Assembly (NCBI GenBank): GCA_977020255.1
Contig: CDROCS010000253.1
Span: forward strand, 3,596,001 to 3,660,000
Length of the DNA stretch: 64,000 bases
Reading direction: 5' to 3'
Origin: Obrimoposthia wandeli
Lineage: Eukaryota
Positions 57,932-64,000 of the stretch are shown here, one piece after another (within the stretch, counting starts at the first letter, position 1; every line of letters begins with the position of its first letter). The notes under the pieces were generated by a model. It worked only from the letters and a program-made list of their open reading frames with translations, made no database searches and had not been told where the DNA came from. A program made the position numbers and the translations under genes.

Positions 57932-58053
57932 TTAAGTTTCATTCTTAAAAAGTAGTACAATATTGCTGTTATTTATCACAGCTATTTGCAGCTTTTATCA
58001 AGCTTAATTATCCCCGCTTATTTGCGCACCTGAGTTCTAATCTGAATTGTGAA

Positions 58054-58371
58054 CTAATGGATTGTCGGTTTTTGCCTATCCCACATGCTTCCTTGCCAGT
58101 TAGAGATGGTTCCAGACGCTTCACAGGTGTCGCAATGCCACTCAATTATGTTGTTTGTAATACATCTTGCTTCAATGTCCCCTTCACAAGACAGCTCATT
58201 CGCTCGGGTATTACATCTCAAGTCAATCTCAATGAGTCGCTGTTCGATTTTGTCAGAAACCGATAACACAATCGTAGTCAGAAATTTGAACACCGCTTTG
58301 GCTTGTTCAGTAAGCGCCAATACGTTGCCCTTCTCGTCAAGAAAATGTCTTAAATCTACTTTTAACGCCAT
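58054..58371 (-). CDS. Hypothetical 105-aa Cys-rich protein
   Basis: ORF with RC...SCEG...EWHCDTC..G.ISNWQGSMWD. Confidence 0.75.
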   Translation of the reverse strand: MALKVDLRHFLDEKGNVLALTEQAKAVFKFLTTIVLSVSDKIEQRLIEIDLRCNTRANELSCEGDIEARCITNNIIEWHCDTCEASGTISNWQGSMWDRQKPTIH

Positions 58372-58394
58372 ATATTTTCCGTTTAATGTGCTTG

Positions 58395-58598
58395 TTAACC
58401 ATTTTCACAGCATACCAAACTTTTAATAAAGTCCTGATATGCTCTAATATCTTTATCTTTTTTCATTGTTTCAGCGTGTTCTGCTTTTGGAGTAATTGCT
58501 AATACCTTCATTTGACTTGTTGATATACCGTAAAGCTCTTTTGAGCTTTTCACTGGTGTTGTTGAATCATCAGCGCCAATTAAGAAAAGTAATGGTTT
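58395..58598 (-). pseudogene. C-terminal remnant of an alpha/beta-hydrolase-like cassette gene
   Basis: Manual translation KPLLFLIGADDSTTP...PKAEHAETM...CCENG*; no in-frame start. The stop lies in GGTTAAC, followed by an attC-like left arm AAGCACATTAAACGG. Confidence 0.5.
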
Positions 58599-58648
58599 TC
58601 ATATTGAGTAACACCCCTTGTTAGGTGCACGATTCTAAATGGTATAGG

Positions 58649-58855
58649 TCAAGTTAGCCATTTAAACGACTTATTTAAAAATTGTTGAGCATCATGTTCA
58701 ACGATTAATCCGTGAGCCATAACGATGATATTTGGTTGCCAAGCGAAGATCTCTTCTAAATTTTTTCTCGCACGAGACTTACCAAAAACGAAACTAAGAC
58801 GCCAATCGATAGGAATTTTACCATTAGGTGCTAATACCCTGCACCTTTGGCACAT
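58649..58855 (-). pseudogene. C-terminal fragment of a DUF4336-family protein
   Basis: LAPNGKIPIDWRLSF...AWQPNIIVMAHG...SFKWL resembles the DUF4336 C-terminus; N-terminal part missing. Confidence 0.65.
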
Positions 58856-58933
58856 AATCGTTGCCAGTAAATAAATAGATAGTAATTATTGAGACAATTT
58901 TTTCATGATAAATACTCTAAAAAACCAATGCTC

Positions 58934-59020
58934 AAATAACAGGCTAAGTAAACGTTGGCTAAAATGTTAAGGAACAAAAACAGCCAACTGTATTTTGTCC
59001 TACTTTAATAGTTTGTATGT
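58934..59020 (-). repeat. Degenerate attC site
   Basis: Shares GTTGGCTAAAATGTT.AGGAAC.AAAA...AACTG..TT..GTCCTA.TTTA with 62976-63076; directly downstream of the 59035 gene. Confidence 0.65.
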
Positions 59021-59034
59021 TTTACTACAACGTA

Positions 59035-59238
59035 CTAGTTAACAACAGCTTTACGTTCCTTTTCATATTCTTCGTAAGATTTACTTTTAACCTTTGTGCA
59101 CTCTGTATACTGTTGCTCTGTTTTAGCCTTATTAATACACTCACTTTTTTGGTAGTCTTGTCCTACTTGGTATAAATCTTTGCTACTACAAGCTGTTAGG
59201 GTGATTAAAAATAAAAGGGAAACAACTAAATTACTCAT
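59035..59238 (-). CDS. Small lipoprotein (cassette-like)
   Basis: Lipobox LTAC, two further Cys, followed by an attC-like site. Confidence 0.8.
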   Translation of the reverse strand: MSNLVVSLLFLITLTACSSKDLYQVGQDYQKSECINKAKTEQQYTECTKVKSKSYEEYEKERKAVVN

Positions 59239-59566
59239 AAAATAACCTCAAAAAAATCTGATATTAAAATTCATTAATCATAGAGTGATTGATTACTCAT
59301 AAAGTTCAACAACAGATGAATATTGATCGTAATGACGCTTTATTATATGTTCCATGATTAACCACTTTGGTAACAATTAAATAAATAACTATCCGCCAAA
59401 GTGGCACTTAAACTGCTTGTATGGATAATAAATTACATAAACTCATTGAAAGTTGTTACGAATGAAAAATGGCATAATCCAGAGCGATGTAGATAGCAAT
59501 GATGTAGGGATCCATTATAATGCCATAGCAGCTATACACACGTATTTAAGAGATATTAAAAAGACC

Positions 59567-60328
59567 ATGGATATCAATGGAAAATGTATCTTATCTACAG
59601 CAGATGAGCACGGCCCGATTTATGTTTACCAAACAAGGACCAGCCGAATTCTCAGCTTTGATGGGCAAAGATATCAAAGCTCAATGAAACTCAACAACAT
59701 TAATGGATTACATCTCGTCTACACCCAGGCCATGATGGCGGGTTTATTTTTTATCCCCACAGTAAAAACAGCCACCGTCATGGGGCTAGGTGCCGGCTCT
59801 ATGGCAAAGAAACTGCTCAGTAGTTTCTCCGAATTAAACGTACACGCGATTGAGTACCGTGAAGCAGTGGTAAAGACCGCAACAGAATATTTTTACTTGC
59901 CCGACACTGAACGCCTATTTATCTATATAGACGATGCTGTGAACTACATAAAAAATACCGTTATTAAAAGCGATATTATCTTTTCAGATCTATACAAATC
60001 ACAAGGTATGGAACCAAAACAAGTACAACTATCCTACTTGCGTGATTGTAAAAATTCACTCAAAAAACAAGGTGTCCTCGTACTCAATATCTGCCATACG
60101 ACTCTTAAATTACGAGAAGAGTTAAATGAATTACTCGCGCTAGAATTTGAAAACCAACTACTCAGTTTCGAAGTAGACAGTGGAAACACGATCGTACTCG
60201 CATTCAAAAACGACATCCCTTCGATAAACGAAGAAGAGCTACTTGCTAGAAGTAAATGCTTGCAAGAGAAGATGAACATTCCGATGGAACGTTATGCCAA
60301 ATTACTATGCGATACACAAAACTTATGA
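59567..60328 (+). CDS. Spermidine-synthase-like SAM methyltransferase (frame open from 59453; family-like sequence starts at ATG 59567)
   Basis: HLVYTQAMM, MGLGAGSMA, AIEYREAVV, DIIFSDLY. Confidence 0.85.
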   Translation: MDINGKCILSTADEHGPIYVYQTRTSRILSFDGQRYQSSMKLNNINGLHLVYTQAMMAGLFFIPTVKTATVMGLGAGSMAKKLLSSFSELNVHAIEYREAVVKTATEYFYLPDTERLFIYIDDAVNYIKNTVIKSDIIFSDLYKSQGMEPKQVQLSYLRDCKNSLKKQGVLVLNICHTTLKLREELNELLALEFENQLLSFEVDSGNTIVLAFKNDIPSINEEELLARSKCLQEKMNIPMERYAKLLCDTQNL

Positions 60329-60797
60329 GAATTTTTGATAGCTTTCCTAGTGCAGGACCGCAATTGGCACCACCATTATTATATGCATTACCTATCAACC
60401 TCCCCATAAGCCTTGCTGAAGTTGGGTTGTGACTTTTTATATAATAGAGCTGAAGCACATCAACATATAGGTGTGTATCACTGTCTGATTTATTATTAAC
60501 CAGCACAAAACCTCTTTCTTCGAAGCTAGCTTTTAAGAAAGATCTAACAATTACTTCCAATTTATCGTTTGATAAGACTTCATATTCATTACCCAATGAA
60601 GAAAGACCGATTCCTAACGTAATATAATTCCGCTTATCCCTTACTTCTAAATATAAAGAGGTAGCATCGACAAGGTGGATAGGCTTAATTTTCAATTTAG
60701 GAGATAACTTTATAAGTTTTGGAGAAGACGAACAGGCACTTAAAGTTAATAAAAAGATAACAAAACTATAAGTAAATAGTCTTTTCATGACACTCAT
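60246..60797 (-). CDS. Lipoprotein, weakly YajG-like; 3' end probably altered
   Basis: Lipobox LSAC, LEVRDKR motif; overlaps the convergent gene by 83 bp; core site GTTAGCC just upstream of the RBS. Confidence 0.6.
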   Translation of the reverse strand: MSVMKRLFTYSFVIFLLTLSACSSSPKLIKLSPKLKIKPIHLVDATSLYLEVRDKRNYITLGIGLSSLGNEYEVLSNDKLEVIVRSFLKASFEERGFVLVNNKSDSDTHLYVDVLQLYYIKSHNPTSARLMGRLIGNAYNNGGANCGPALGKLSKILISFVYRIVIWHNVPSECSSSLASIYF

Positions 60798-60821
60798 CCA
60801 AAACTTTCCTATAAGGCTAAC

Positions 60822-61200
60822 GAGCTTGTAGAATTACTCGTTTTTTATTGTTATTACTAATCTGAGAAACATTAACTGACTTTGCGTAGTGATTCAAATG
60901 AAAGCTTTGTTTTTATTAAATATTATTTTGATCGCGATATTTTTGGAATTAGTGCTTTTTGAGGGGATTACTAACGAAATTTCAGCAATAACGGGAGGAG
61001 TCTCCGTTACCTTGCTGCTATTGCAGGCTATTTCTTAACTTCTCTATATTATGAACTAAGCAATACATCTGCCACTGGATATACACTTTTTCTTGTCCGC
61101 GCAAAGTGAATTTATTCATACCTTTATTGACGGTGATGTTGCCAAATACGGGTCAATCATGCCTAATCGTTATTTACACTATAAAGCAGACGTCGGGCTT
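60822..61200 (-). mobile_element. IS1182-family remnant: transposase C-terminus plus probable right terminal inverted repeat
   Basis: 61152-61018 translates PVFGNITVNKGMNKFTLRGQEKVYIQWQMYCLVHNIEKLRNSLQ*, preceded out of frame by RLGMI. End motif GAGCTTGTAGAATTACTC at 60822. Confidence 0.72.
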
Positions 61201-61255
61201 GTCCAACACCCGAATAAGGTGTCGGCTGCACGACACCTATTCTTATTTGTTATAT
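61201..61255 (-). repeat. Short (55-bp) attC site
   Basis: Minus strand ATATAAC-AAATAAGAATAGGTGTCG-TGCAGC-CGACACCTTATTCGGGT-GTTGGAC, 4 bp after the stop of the 61260 ORF. Confidence 0.78.
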
Positions 61256-61259
61256 GCGT

Positions 61260-61555
61260 TTACTCATTAACTGAAGTGGATTTATGCTCACAAGAAACTA
61301 CTGCTGCACATAAACCACTAAATGCTAACACGCAGACTGAAGAAACTATTCCCCATATTGAAATCATAATTGCGGGACCACTATTACTTGGTACAGTCAT
61401 AGTCATTCCATTTCCAAAATTCGTAGTTCCGCCAGAGCCACCAAAAACACCGTAAATACCTATAAAAACAGTGATTATAAATAAGTACACCAAGCACCCG
61501 AGAAGCAATAAGTAAGATTTTCAGTTCTGATTTTTGAGTATGGATAAAGTTTCAT
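61260..61555 (-). pseudogene. Small membrane-protein cassette gene, probably frameshifted
   Basis: AAAGGA RBS plus ATG at 61555 reads only 26 codons; the hydrophobic body (track ORF 61260-61508) is in another frame. Confidence 0.55.
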
Positions 61556-61596
61556 ATTATTCCTTTAATGTGAATTTAACTTGACGTGGGGAGTCA

Positions 61597-61683
61597 TACC
61601 AAAGCCTTTCTAAGCAGAAAATAATGGTTAGCTATAATTACGAAGCGATGGCCAACTGTTATTTTTCCGTTTAAGCAACTTGT
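61597..61683 (-). repeat. attC site interrupted at its inverse core
   Basis: Close paralogue of 63381-63470 (TAAGC.GA...CGAAGCGATGGCCAACTGTT..TT..CCGTTTAAGCAACTT); ends at TTGT where intron-like sequence begins. Confidence 0.75.
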
Positions 61684-61874
61684 GTACGCCCAGCATGGGC
61701 ATGAACTAATGAGGTAAAAGTCCTCTGTAGGAAGATCACCGTTTAGTTAACTGATTGTTATTAAACACTAAATACTAGCGAATGGCAAGGGCTTAGGCTA
61801 GAGGTGAGTTGGCACAAGACGACGAAACCACGTGATCTAATGGCCACCGTAAATGATGCAGCAGTGCAAAGAAG
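61684..61874 (+). mobile_element. 5' remnant (part of domain I) of a group IIC-attC intron, no RT ORF
   Basis: GTACGCCCAGCATGGGC start, GAGGTAAAAGTCCTC hairpin, ACTAGCGAATGGCAAGGG, CGTAAATGATGCAG; inserted antisense to the cassettes after attC TTGT. Confidence 0.7.
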
Positions 61875-62049
61875 CGAACCAGATGAAAACTCTTTATTGA
61901 CTTGTTAGTTGCTATTTATTAAAAGCGCAATAGAAGCAATAATTTACCATGTTTATTTGATAAGTGAAAGACACAAAAAACATCTCCGTACTACACGAAT
62001 AACGTGAACTTTGAGCCTTAAAAAGTAAAGCTAGCTTGGTAATTAAACT

Positions 62050-62105
62050 GAGTAAGGCGAAAACTTGATTGGGCAAAAGCCAACTGTACTTTGTCCTTGT
62101 TTAAC
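62050..62105 (-). repeat. Heavily degraded attC remnant
   Basis: AGCCAACTGTACTTTGTCC matches AGCCAACTGTATTTTGTCC of the 58934 site; lies just after the CPBP stop. Confidence 0.4.
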
Positions 62106-62108
62106 AGC

Positions 62109-62924
62109 TTAAGTGCAATGACTTAAGGATTCATTAAAGCGCTTTTTATTAAACGCTACAACAAAAATTATAATAATGCCAAATATCGCAAATGCGGCTC
62201 CAAACTCCCCAACGACATATTCAGTTTTACCTGTATTTACGGTCAACAGGTCGAATACATGCTGAATATACAAGTTGTGACTACTGTGCAAAAACAATCC
62301 TGTCCATAAGCTCCCAGATTTAATTCTGAACCAAGTGTAAATGAAATTTGTACCTATAATCATAAGCGAAAAACACACTAACTGATAAAAAACACTCACC
62401 TCAGTGCCGTATAACCCTAGAACGATAATGGGGTAATGCCATACAGACCAAATAACACCAATAATTAATGAAATTTGAAATGGACTATATTTTTGAAACA
62501 ATTTTGGAGTTAAATAGCCACGCCAACCAATCTCTTCGCCTACAGCAGAATGGGCTGCATAAAGAGTACCTTCAGCGAATAGTGCTAGCATTGAAATAAA
62601 TGCAACACTTGTTACATACGTAGAATCTAATCCTCCATAACTGCCTAATGGAGTAAGCCAAACAACTCCGTATACAAGTAAACTGTATAAGATTGGAGTA
62701 AGATAACTCAAGACTTGGTATTTAACTTTACCAAGTCTCCAACCAAATGATTTTAAATTATTTTTAAATAAAAAAGCAGTTAATAAGCCTGATAAACCGG
62801 GGCCCCATGCAAAACCTAAAAGCCATCCAGTATTATCAGTTGTTACCCACAAATAAGTAAAAATAGAACTTATTGAAAATGTTAAGATCAAAAATATGCA
62901 GACTTCAAACCTTACATTTTTCAA
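62109..62924 (-). CDS. CPBP (CAAX/Abi) intramembrane metalloprotease
   Basis: GEEIGWRGY, GVIWSVWHYP, HSSHN motifs. Confidence 0.92.
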   Translation of the reverse strand: MKNVRFEVCIFLILTFSISSIFTYLWVTTDNTGWLLGFAWGPGLSGLLTAFLFKNNLKSFGWRLGKVKYQVLSYLTPILYSLLVYGVVWLTPLGSYGGLDSTYVTSVAFISMLALFAEGTLYAAHSAVGEEIGWRGYLTPKLFQKYSPFQISLIIGVIWSVWHYPIIVLGLYGTEVSVFYQLVCFSLMIIGTNFIYTWFRIKSGSLWTGLFLHSSHNLYIQHVFDLLTVNTGKTEYVVGEFGAAFAIFGIIIIFVVAFNKKRFNESLSHCT

Positions 62925-62975
62925 TCAATATCTTCCTTATTATTTTAATACACATAACTACAAGAATACTCTAGG

Positions 62976-63076
62976 CACCAACGCCCACGTTAAGGGGCAA
63001 TAATAAAGTTGGCTAAAATGTTGAGGAACGAAAAACAACAAACTGTTTTAAGTCCTAGTTTATTTGCTTGTTATAG
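62976..63076 (-). repeat. attC site (101 bp), both cores intact
   Basis: Minus strand CTATAAC-AAGCAAATAAACTAGGAC...GCCCCTTAACGTGGGC-GTTGGTG, 6 bp after the excalibur gene stop; right end resembles VCR (GCCCCTTAGGCGGGCGTT). Confidence 0.82.
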
Positions 63077-63082
63077 GTTTAA

Positions 63083-63361
63083 TCACCTACCTTTATTAAA
63101 CTGCCTTTCGCATGGAGTACCGTCATTATCACCATCCATTTTGGTATTAGGGCAATGTTCGATGAAGTATTTAGCTTCAGCATAAGACTTCATTTGCGAG
63201 CAATGCTGCCTACCGTCGCACTTAAATTTGGTATTAGATTTCTGCTTTTTAGTTGTAACTTTTTTATCTGGAGCTTTAGAGTACTGGTTAGCTGAACTTG
63301 TAGCAGAAAAAGCTAAAATACAGCACAGGCTTATTAAGATAATTGGATATGAATTTTTCAA
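63083..63361 (-). CDS. Secreted excalibur calcium-binding domain protein
   Basis: Signal peptide; CDGRQHCSQM...CPNTKMDGDNDGTPCE. Confidence 0.88.
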   Translation of the reverse strand: MKNSYPIILISLCCILAFSATSSANQYSKAPDKKVTTKKQKSNTKFKCDGRQHCSQMKSYAEAKYFIEHCPNTKMDGDNDGTPCERQFNKGR

Positions 63362-63380
63362 TGTACACCTTCCTTGTGGA

Positions 63381-63470
63381 ACCTATAGACTTGCTAAGCG
63401 GATAAAAACAGTTGGCTATAATCGCGAAGCGATGGCCAACTGTTTTTATTCCGTTTAAGCAACTTATATG
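63381..63470 (-). repeat. attC site with both core GTT triplets destroyed
   Basis: Perfect 15-bp inner IR ATAAAAACAGTTGGC/GCCAACTGTTTTTAT; ends ACCTATAG (for ACCTAAC) and CAACTT-ATATG (GTT missing). Confidence 0.75.
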
Positions 63471-63473
63471 ATT

Positions 63474-63851
63474 TTATAAGTGACTACCCGCGTAATGGGC
63501 AATTGCATCACCTAAATAATTAACCATTTCTGGATGATACGAATTGTGAAACTTTTTCATATCGTCATTTTCTTTATAAAATATTCCCATGCCTATATAT
63601 GCTTCTTTGGATGGGGTATAGAAACGACAAGCTATTTCAAAGTGTTCTTTCATTAACTCTTGAACACTTTCATTATCAACGGCTGTCTCATCGGCGTACT
63701 TTGCTAATTTTTTATACAGAATATCCCAGTCTTGATAGACAAGCTCTCTATTAACATGCGCCCAATTATCTGTTGTTGATAAGCTGTGAGTTTGCTCCAC
63801 ATTAAGAGCATTTTTACATTTTCCTAAATATTCTTTACTTAATTTATTCAT
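63474..63851 (-). CDS. Stand-alone TipAS antibiotic-recognition-domain protein (ATG 63851; track start 63860 is a TTG)
   Basis: VQELMKEHFEIACRFYTPSKEAYIGMGIFY...YLGDAIAHYA resembles TipAS. Confidence 0.75.
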   Translation of the reverse strand: MNKLSKEYLGKCKNALNVEQTHSLSTTDNWAHVNRELVYQDWDILYKKLAKYADETAVDNESVQELMKEHFEIACRFYTPSKEAYIGMGIFYKENDDMKKFHNSYHPEMVNYLGDAIAHYAGSHL

Positions 63852-63854
63852 CTG

Positions 63855-63907
63855 GGACAACCAGCTGCGCTTAAGTGTAGTGTCCGACTTGAATTATCTT
63901 GTTATTT
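63855..63907 (-). repeat. Short attC-like site upstream of the TipAS cassette
   Basis: Minus strand AAATAAC-AAGATA-ATTCAAGT...ACTTAAG...GTTGTCC; TT(C)AAGT/ACTTAA pairing with an extrahelical base; ATG starts 4 nt after the core. Confidence 0.55.
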
Positions 63908-64000
63908 GATGGTATCGGAAAACTACTAACGATAACAAGAGCTTTAATAAGTTTGGCGGCCCGACCGTAGAACTAAAAAGTGCCCAGCGCCACGACTAAC

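What the first reader, a model, noticed from the sequence alone, without database searches (positions are those of the whole stretch)
60815..61255. IS1182-like remnant whose two ends both coincide with attC core sites
Seen: the transposase C-terminus (EPVFGNI-like...TLRG.EKV..QW.MYCLVHNIEKL) at 61018-61200. Its putative terminal repeat abuts a cassette core exactly (minus strand ...TTCTACAAGCTC|GTTAGCC, then RBS and the lipoprotein ATG). The other end begins at the GTT of the 55-bp attC (GTTGGACAAGCCCGACGT, which reads like continuing transposase codons). Established: IS1111-attC elements (IS110 family) target attC sites, and IntI crosses over between G and TT and can use secondary GTT sites. 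Inference: (1) this IS1182 lineage inserts specifically at attC cores, which I do not know to be described for this family; (2) the rest of the IS was removed by IntI recombination between the attC and a GTT inside the transposase. The terminal-repeat assignment rests on my recollection of GAGGCTGTAGAAAA-type ends and needs checking.
Basis: partly seen in the sequence, partly recalled or inferred. Interest (0 to 1): 0.7.

Follow-up and report, generated by a model that had tools for sequence, protein, structure and literature searches.

The report
Stump of an integron-homing transposon
A 350-base stump of a jumping gene lies exactly at the joint between two integron gene cassettes, and dozens of intact relatives in other marine bacteria sit at that same three-letter joint, so this transposon lineage homes to integron recombination sites; the stump's other end is only a deletion scar.

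Summary
Window 61171-60822 (minus strand) is the last 350 bp of an IS1182-family insertion sequence. It holds transposase codons ~460-510 (frameshifted), the 3' untranslated region and an intact 18-bp right inverted repeat.

The repeat ends at 60822. GTT (60821-60819), a ribosome-binding site and the lipoprotein start follow, which is the 5' boundary of a cassette in a decaying attC array with no integrase nearby.

This placement is not chance. Among 38 full-length relatives at 38 different sites in about ten marine genera, 35 are flanked GTT|IS|GTT. Nearly all have an attC ending GGCGTT on the left, always in one orientation. I found no paper describing it. This scan had already noted the same element on another piece of this genome.

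The second inference fails. IS identity stops at 61171, not at the GTT of 61207-61205. The stretch 61254-61165, including the '55-bp attC', is the terminal 90 bp of an element carrying an IS91-family transposase and a tyrosine recombinase, seen in at least seven copies. The two fragments meet in a 7-bp microhomology (61171-61165) that contains no GTT. That is an ordinary deletion, not an IntI crossover.

The parts
60815..60821 (-). Cassette 5' boundary GTTAGCC. GTT at 60821-60819 is the target triplet (the attC R' core, where IntI crosses over).
   Evidence: Read directly from the sequence. The same GTT+purine follows the IS end in 15/15 ends in this assembly and 60/65 ends in other genomes.
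60822..60839 (-). Right inverted repeat (IRR) of the IS1182-family element. It is intact.
   Evidence: Aligns with the IRR of copies L002-L004. The 18-nt inverted repeats are 94% complementary in L004.
60840..61017 (-). 3' non-coding region of the IS. It has diverged from the copies on this chromosome.
   Evidence: One continuous 356-nt alignment at 77% identity to a Colwellia relative (L122) runs from the transposase gene through the IRR. See also the alignment.
61018..61171 (-). Transposase pseudogene fragment, codons ~460-510 of 510. It has a 1-nt deletion near 61153. The stop codon is at 61020-61018.
   Evidence: Pfam DDE_Tnp_1_6. 94% DNA identity to a Thalassotalea copy and 90% to the intact copy on this chromosome, both ending at 61169-61171. 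The frameshift is visible.
61165..61171 (-). Deletion junction: the 7-bp microhomology AACGATT, shared by both fragments.
   Evidence: Three-way comparison of the window, IS copies and IS91-type ends.
61165..61254 (-). Terminal ~90 bp of an element carrying an IS91-family transposase and a tyrosine recombinase.
   Evidence: Seven other copies at 81-92% identity continue past this point into the element body. The element's ORFs match Phage_integrase, Zn_Tnp_IS91 + Y2_Tnp and NCBIfam IS91.
61249..61253 (-). ATAAC, the probable R'' core left over from the lost attC of the 82-aa cassette.
   Evidence: Conservation among copies of the repeat begins here, and the upstream flanks all differ. The motif matches the R'' consensus of this genome's attCs.
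60246..60797 (-). Lipoprotein-like cassette ORF directly downstream of the IS end.
   Evidence: ORF list; weak Pfam Lipoprotein_16 hit.
61260..61508 (-). 82-aa hydrophobic ORF of the upstream cassette.
   Evidence: ORF list.
61600..61683 (-). Canonical attC of this array. Its R' triplet reads TTT instead of GTT.
   Evidence: nhmmer with an attC profile built from this genome, E 1.2e-14; alignment.
58926..59016 (-). Next attC downstream. It closes the lipoprotein cassette and is the leftmost attC of the array.
   Evidence: nhmmer E 2.2e-15.
61568..61596 (-). Solo 29-nt end of an IS110/IS1111-type element lying against the attC.
   Evidence: The same sequence begins full elements after two other attCs. 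Those elements encode a DEDD IS110-family transposase.

Best explanation
The window holds the decayed 3' end of an IS1182-family DDE insertion sequence. Full size is about 1.8 kb, with a 510-aa transposase and 18-bp inverted repeats beginning GAGGCTGTAGAA.

This lineage inserts in one orientation into the GTT triplet of the attC R' core, the point where cassettes are joined. It duplicates GTT, so the left repeat touches the end of an attC (GGCGTT) and the right repeat touches the start of the next cassette (GTT, purine, ribosome-binding site, ATG). The copy in the window landed in front of the lipoprotein cassette in this way.

Later, one deletion of roughly 3.7 kb ran between two short direct repeats (AACGATT). 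One repeat lay near the end of a neighbouring IS91-family/recombinase element, which itself sits in the R'' core of the upstream attC. The other repeat lay in transposase codon ~460. The deletion removed most of both elements and the attC between them.

Shown: the anatomy, the target pattern, the orientation and the breakpoint.

Inferred:
- that the transposase itself chooses the site, probably by reading the base of the attC stem as IS1272 reads hairpins;
- that GTT is a true 3-bp target duplication;
- the order and size of the deletion.
For: Remnant anatomy.

Full copies on this chromosome: an intact 510-aa ORF and 18-bp inverted repeats.

The repeats are attCs:
- Three minus-strand arrays of about 90-bp imperfect palindromes with AAC...GTT cores.
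- Two of the arrays start within about 0.5 kb of an integron integrase gene (469 bits, cut-off 265) or its pseudogene.
- They also host an IS110-type element and a group II intron reverse transcriptase.

Target pattern in this assembly: 15/15 right ends are followed by GTT and 8/8 left ends are preceded by CGTT, including MITE-like derivatives.

Target pattern in other genomes (78 loci from Colwellia, Thalassotalea, Psychromonas, Pseudocolwellia, Psychrobium, Psychrosphaera, Pseudoalteromonas, Marinomonas and others, plus relatives at 37-50% identity):
- 38 full copies at 38 unique sites: 35 GTT/GTT and 1 ATT/ATT.
- 42 of 56 unique left flanks end in GGCGTT.
- Binomial P below 1e-88.
- An attC profile hit ends within 6 nt of the left repeat in 28/38 copies.
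- All 103 attC hits are co-oriented with the transposase.
- Seven of the nine profile-negative sites with flank sequence still look like attCs: four fold with AAC paired to GTT, three by sequence.
- A Pseudoalteromonas chromid shows the same layout.

Target duplication: the ATT|IS|ATT site, and tandem arrays of the form IS-GTT-MITE-GTT.

Precedent: IS1272, an IS1182-family member, targets hairpins (PMC5678879, PMC4923244).

Breakpoint.
Against: - I found no empty-site/occupied-site pair. The flanks of the MITE I tested have no paralogue without the insert, so the GTT duplication rests on consensus attCs having a single GTT and on one ATT/ATT case.
- There is no experimental transposition data.
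- attCs were called with a home-made nhmmer profile, not with IntegronFinder.
- The transposase scores 267.6 bits against NCBIfam IS1182, just under the cut-off of 270.
- In tandem insertions the left neighbour is another IS end rather than an attC. Two sites (L067, L088) are not attCs. An attC stem is therefore not strictly required.
- The array in the window has no integrase of its own.
- The single-deletion scenario is the simplest one, but the order of events cannot be read from one genome.
Confidence: 0.85

Rival explanations
1. The IS does not choose the site. It is a passenger or pseudo-cassette that the integron integrase moves between G and TT, which would also leave GTT on both sides.
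For: The element begins after GTT and ends before GTT, as a cassette would. It always points the way the cassettes do. The last bases before the right repeat can pair with the flank as a 6-bp AACGAG/CTCGTT stem.
Against: The element has no attC-like two-box stem at its 3' end. Its 18-bp terminal inverted repeats and DDE transposase are typical of a transposon. Gene-less derivatives of 31 to about 190 bp keep only the two repeats. Two insertions with GTT repeats lie outside attCs, one of them inside a group II reverse-transcriptase ORF. An ATT/ATT site exists.
Confidence: 0.06
2. One reading: IntI recombined the attC at 61207-61205 with a secondary GTT inside the transposase gene and so deleted the 5' part of the IS.
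For: A GTTGGAC motif sits at the 3' foot of an attC-like hairpin.
Against: The sequence from 61204 to 61172 continues exactly as it does in seven other copies of the IS91-type end, so nothing was recombined at that GTT. IS identity begins only at 61171. The junction AACGATT contains no GTT.
Confidence: 0.03
3. The insertion makes no duplication. One GTT belongs to the element's terminus, and the element is placed by blunt insertion between GGC and GTT, or just after GTT, of the core.
For: IS1272 of the same family is reported to make no target duplications (PMC4923244). GTT is nearly invariant on both sides.
Against: The two GTTs are direct repeats, not inverted ones, so they are not part of the inverted repeats. 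One site carries ATT on both sides, which independent mutation would rarely produce. Tandem elements share exactly one GTT between them.
Confidence: 0.1
4. The 55-nt hairpin at 61253-61201 is a working attC of the 82-aa cassette, and the IS91-type element always lies next to that attC type rather than containing it.
For: It folds with AAC paired to GTT, an unpaired spacer, a 12-bp stem and one bulged base, which is the layout of an attC. It always follows a cassette ORF.
Against: It is 81-92% conserved together with the 35 or more bases beyond its GTT in every copy, while the upstream cassettes all differ. In one copy the spacer after AAC is absent, so only the part after AACAAG travels with the element. 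In two copies the far end of the element runs straight into a canonical attC that starts AACAAG, as expected if the element split one attC at its R'' core.
Confidence: 0.15

Closest known systems
IS1111-attC group (ISPa21, ISPst6, ISKpn4; IS110/IS1111 family)
   Same: Insertion sequences that home to one end of integron attC sites in a fixed orientation (PMC11187229, PMC3001079).
   Different: Those elements use a DEDD transposase guided by a seekRNA. They have no terminal inverted repeats of this kind. They are reported near the 5' end of attC motifs and antisense to the cassettes. The element here encodes a DDE transposase with 18-bp inverted repeats, sits at the 3' (R') GTT, is co-oriented with the cassettes and is flanked by a 3-bp repeat.
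Group IIC-attC introns
   Same: Mobile elements specialised on attC sites. One reverse-transcriptase gene of this type lies in the same array.
   Different: They are retroelements that insert into the bottom strand, antisense to the cassettes. They have no transposase, no inverted repeats and no GTT duplication.
IS1272 and other palindrome-targeting members of the IS1182 family
   Same: Same transposase family. The target is a DNA hairpin or inverted repeat rather than an open sequence (PMC5678879, PMC4923244).
   Different: IS1272 shows no primary-sequence preference, inserts in either orientation, and deletes or replaces the hairpin without duplication. The element here leaves the attC whole, uses one triplet at its 3' foot, has one orientation and is flanked by GTT repeats.
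IS91-family elements that carry a tyrosine recombinase gene (recalled from ISfinder descriptions; not checked here)
   Same: The fragment at 61254-61165 is the end that lies about 270 bp downstream of an IS91-family Y2 transposase gene. That gene is preceded by a Xer-like recombinase gene.
   Different: All copies seen here are bounded by AACAAG, the R'' core of attC sites. I do not know this to be described for the family.

Membership tests
IS1182 family | DDE transposase of the IS1182 type | tested here: inconclusive
   The full copy has Pfam DUF772 + DDE_Tnp_1 + DDE_Tnp_1_6. NCBIfam IS1182 is by far the best model (E 2e-79), but it scores 267.6 bits against a cut-off of 270.
IS1182 family | Single transposase ORF between short terminal inverted repeats; size about 1.3-2 kb | tested here: met
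   1798 bp, a 510-aa ORF and 18-nt inverted repeats that are 94% complementary.
IS1182 family | The window fragment itself is a piece of such an element | tested here: met
   85-94% DNA identity over 61171-61019 to full copies, with contiguous alignment to the right repeat.
Integron attC site (the repeats flanking the IS) | Imperfect palindrome with an AAC core at the 5' end and a GTT core at the 3' end, following each cassette ORF, all in one orientation | tested here: met
   Consensus alignment and 52 profile hits in three one-strand arrays; folds.
Integron attC site (the repeats flanking the IS) | Array adjacent to an integron integrase gene | tested here: inconclusive
   Met for the arrays at 3.51-3.53 Mb (intI 469.6 bits) and 3.00-3.02 Mb (intI pseudogene). 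The array in the window has no intI within the stretch examined, so it is a CALIN.
Integron attC site (the repeats flanking the IS) | Recombined by IntI | not testable with these tools
   Needs an excision or integration assay.
IS1111-attC group | DEDD (IS110-type) transposase | tested here: not met
   The IS in question has DDE domains only. The IS110-type protein in the array belongs to a different element.
IS91 family (fragment 61254-61165) | Y2 HUH transposase with zinc-binding domain | tested here: met
   Found in the full copies: Zn_Tnp_IS91 + Y2_Tnp, NCBIfam IS91 at 301 bits against a cut-off of 125. The window keeps only the non-coding terminal 90 bp.
IS91 family (fragment 61254-61165) | Conserved oriIS/terIS ends and a tetranucleotide target next to oriIS | not tested
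   No reference ends were available. The flank next to this end reads GTTAT on the element's strand, which resembles the GTTC/CTTG target that I recall for IS91.

The most novel reading that the evidence does not exclude
A whole clade of IS1182-family DDE transposons has specialised on the three bases where integron cassettes are joined. The clade runs from Alteromonadales to a Desulfamplus relative at 37% identity. Each element inserts in one orientation and so becomes the 5' part of the next cassette, which would let it travel with that cassette when IntI moves it. In this genome it shares the arrays with three unrelated core-site homers: an IS110-type element, a group II intron, and an IS91-family/recombinase element that sits in the R'' core. 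Integron arrays would then support a guild of site-specific parasites wider than the two kinds described so far.
Probability: 0.6. Interest if true: 0.7.

Novelty: new variant of a known kind. Interest (0 to 1): 0.6.

Why it matters
Only two kinds of mobile element are described in the papers I could search as homing to integron attC sites: IS1111-attC insertion sequences and group IIC-attC introns. A classical cut-and-paste type transposase that hits the exact IntI crossover triplet, with strict orientation, would be a third and mechanistically different solution. It would also be a rare case of near-absolute site specificity in a DDE insertion sequence.

Such elements can shape integrons in three ways.
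- They place homologous repeats in separate arrays; this chromosome has copies in all three of its arrays. Recombination between them can break arrays into integrase-less clusters like the one in the window.
- They separate cassettes from upstream transcription.
- They may ride along with cassettes when those move.

The remnant itself has no function. It is a dated scar showing that at least three different homing elements hit neighbouring attC cores within 800 bp.

Tried and rejected
- **Empty sites.** I compared an antitoxin cassette behind the 31-bp mini-element with its paralogue. I also searched the whole assembly with a MITE plus its flanks. Neither gave an unoccupied copy of the same junction. 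A broader flank search in a script timed out and added only one nested case, in which the IS is followed by GTT and then the IS110-type end.
- **Promoters.** The promoter scan of 60200-61700 found 4 sites against 5.6 expected, so there is no support for an outward promoter in the remnant.
- **RNA families.** Rfam at E up to 0.1 on 58000-64000 found nothing.
- **Motif scan for attC arms.** A simple scan with four mismatches was too noisy. I replaced it with an iterated nhmmer profile.
- **Chance match.** One exact 14-mer match to the repeat (C253:3249162) lies inside a gene and is a chance match.
- **Plasmids.** Only three marine replicons carry a relative and no clinical ones do.
- **Literature.** Seven full-text searches combining IS1182, attC, integron, DDE, MITE, Colwellia and Psychromonas found no description of this target. 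Tetu and Holmes 2008 is not held in the library. ISfinder could not be consulted.

Full report
**Setting.** The window is positions 3,596,001-3,660,000 of a 4.68-Mb bacterial contig (C253) inside a 1.35-Gb assembly that holds many bacterial contigs. The closest transposase relative (96%) is from a Thalassotalea genome, so the organism is probably a member of the Colwellia/Thalassotalea group; this is an inference.

**The remnant.**
- On the minus strand, 61146-61021 translates to the last 42 residues of a transposase and matches Pfam DDE_Tnp_1_6 at E 3e-9.
- Three longer copies lie on the same contig. One has an intact 510-aa ORF (C253:3514412-3516314). A decayed one lies only 4.5 kb to the right of the remnant.
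- The element is 1798 bp long, with 18-nt inverted repeats that begin GAGGCTGTAGAA.
- The full transposase has DUF772, DDE_Tnp_1 and DDE_Tnp_1_6 domains. NCBIfam IS1182 is its best model, at 267.6 bits against a cut-off of 270.
- Alignment shows that the window keeps the gene from about codon 460 (with a one-base deletion), a diverged 3' untranslated region, and a complete right repeat at 60839-60822.

**The surroundings are integron cassettes.**
- I built a profile from eleven clear ~90-bp palindromes and iterated it with nhmmer. It finds 52 sites in the four stretches of C253 examined, and 51 of them lie on the minus strand in three arrays.
- Two arrays end within about 0.5 kb of an integron integrase gene (469.6 bits, cut-off 265) or its pseudogene.
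- The third array starts at window 58926 and runs beyond the window. It has no integrase in the stretch examined.
- On the cassette strand each site starts with ATAACAAG and ends with GGC, GTT and a purine.
- The arrays also contain an IS110-type element and a group II intron reverse transcriptase. Both belong to kinds known to home to attC sites.

**The right end and the core site.**
- In this assembly, every right end of the IS or of its gene-less derivatives is followed by GTT and a purine, then a ribosome-binding site and a start codon (15 of 15).
- Every left end is preceded by CGTT (8 of 8). In the seven that do not abut another copy of the element, that CGTT is the 3' end of an attC.
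- A scan of one genome per species returned 78 loci from about ten marine genera, plus distant relatives.
- Of 38 full-length copies at 38 different sites, 35 are flanked GTT/GTT and one is flanked ATT/ATT.
- Of 56 unique left flanks, 54 end in GTT and 42 end in GGCGTT. Of 65 unique right flanks, 60 start with GTT, and 55 have A next.
- GTT makes up 2% of triplets in these loci, so the binomial probabilities are below 1e-88.
- An attC profile hit ends within 6 nt of the left repeat in 28 of the 38 copies. All 103 attC hits in these loci point the same way as the transposase.
- One of the ten copies without a profile hit (L058) has only 6 nt of left flank. Of the other nine, four (L054, L066, L072, L103) fold into attC-type hairpins of other sequence families with AAC paired to GTT. 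Three more (L049, L051, L113) look like attCs by sequence, and two (L067, L088) are not attCs.
- A Pseudoalteromonas chromid shows the same layout.

**How it probably works.**
- The terminal inverted repeats, the DDE domains and the derivatives of 31 to about 190 bp all point to ordinary transposition.
- The direct GTT repeats, the ATT/ATT site and the tandem arrays in which two elements share one GTT point to a 3-bp target duplication.
- The fixed orientation and the near-restriction to attC sites imply that the transposase reads something asymmetric at the 3' foot of the attC stem.
- IS1272, in the same family, targets hairpins without sequence preference and deletes them (PMC5678879, PMC4923244). 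The behaviour seen here is a more exact version of that habit.
- What the transposase recognises, and whether the target is double- or single-stranded, cannot be told from sequence.
- After insertion the element lies at the 5' end of the next cassette. It could therefore be moved with that cassette by IntI. This is an inference.

**The left end.**
- No alignment to any of more than 40 relatives passes 61171.
- The stretch 61254-61165 is a separate repeat. At 81-92% identity it occurs at seven other places, and there it continues into a 2.3-kb element.
- That element encodes a Xer-like tyrosine recombinase and an IS91-family Y2 transposase. The hairpin lies about 270 bp downstream of the transposase stop.
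However, it travels with the element.
- All copies are bounded by AACAAG. In two copies the recombinase end of the element runs directly into a canonical attC.
- This element therefore appears to split attCs at the R'' core. ATAAC at 61253-61249 is probably all that is left of the upstream cassette's attC.
- The IS91-type sequence and the IS both contain AACGATT or AGCGATT at the point where they meet, 61171-61165.
- One deletion between these short repeats explains the structure. It would have removed the body of the IS91-type element, the attC and about 1.45 kb of the IS.
- There is no GTT at the junction, and nothing is recombined at 61207-61205.

**Novelty.**
- The papers I could search name only the IS1111-attC group and group II introns as attC-homing elements. 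They place both near the 5' end of the site, antisense to the cassettes.
- No paper linking IS1182 to attC was found. ISfinder could not be checked.
- An earlier follow-up in this scan (s1-211128) reached the same reading from a MITE on another piece of this genome. My evidence was gathered independently of it, and it adds the survey across genera.

**Verdict.** The feature is real. The right-end coincidence is meaningful and reflects a probably undescribed target specificity. The left-end coincidence is false and is explained by a deletion into a neighbouring mobile element.

Noticed in passing
window 61568-61596 (minus); full copies at L036:6348-7532 and in L041: A 29-nt solo end of an IS110/IS1111-type element lies directly after the attC at 61683-61600. 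Full elements with a 394-aa DEDD transposase begin with the same sequence after two other attCs, antisense to the cassettes.
   Followed up: partly
C253:3003978-3006303, 3009075-3011331, ~3523745-3525720 (L035, L040, L038); ends on C321, C1101, C410: A 2.3-kb element encodes a tyrosine recombinase and an IS91-family transposase. It is bounded by AACAAG on both sides, and in two copies it is followed directly by a canonical attC. It appears to home to the R'' core of attC sites.
   Followed up: partly
L036:4194-5561 (+): A group II intron reverse transcriptase/maturase gene (455 aa) lies in the same array, antisense to the cassettes.
   Followed up: partly
L045:212-242 (C253:3417811-3417841): A 31-bp mini-element made only of a left and a right repeat lies between GGGCGTT and GTTAGC, in front of an antitoxin cassette far from the three arrays.
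   Followed up: no
C253:3516290-3516314 (region A): The only copy on this chromosome with an intact 510-aa transposase ORF has a degraded left inverted repeat, so it may no longer be mobile.
   Followed up: no
L067:224 and L088:2343: Two relatives are inserted outside attC sites yet are still flanked by GTT. One of them lies inside the YADD codons of a group II intron reverse transcriptase.
   Followed up: no
L090:4229: A nested case in a Colwellia genome: the IS right end, then GTT, then the end of the IS110-type element. Both homers used the same core.
   Followed up: no
window 61600-61602 (minus): The attC at 61683-61600 carries TTT where the core GTT should be, which fits a decaying, integrase-less array.
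   Followed up: no
window 60246-60328: The lipoprotein ORF (minus) and a spermidine-synthase-like ORF (plus, 59453-60328) converge and overlap by 83 bp inside one cassette.
   Followed up: no
whole assembly G000: Four full-length integron integrase genes lie on four different contigs (C253, C5466, C2866, C666). At least 15 MITE copies are spread over about ten contigs, so several related integron-bearing bacteria are mixed into this 1.35-Gb assembly.
   Followed up: no
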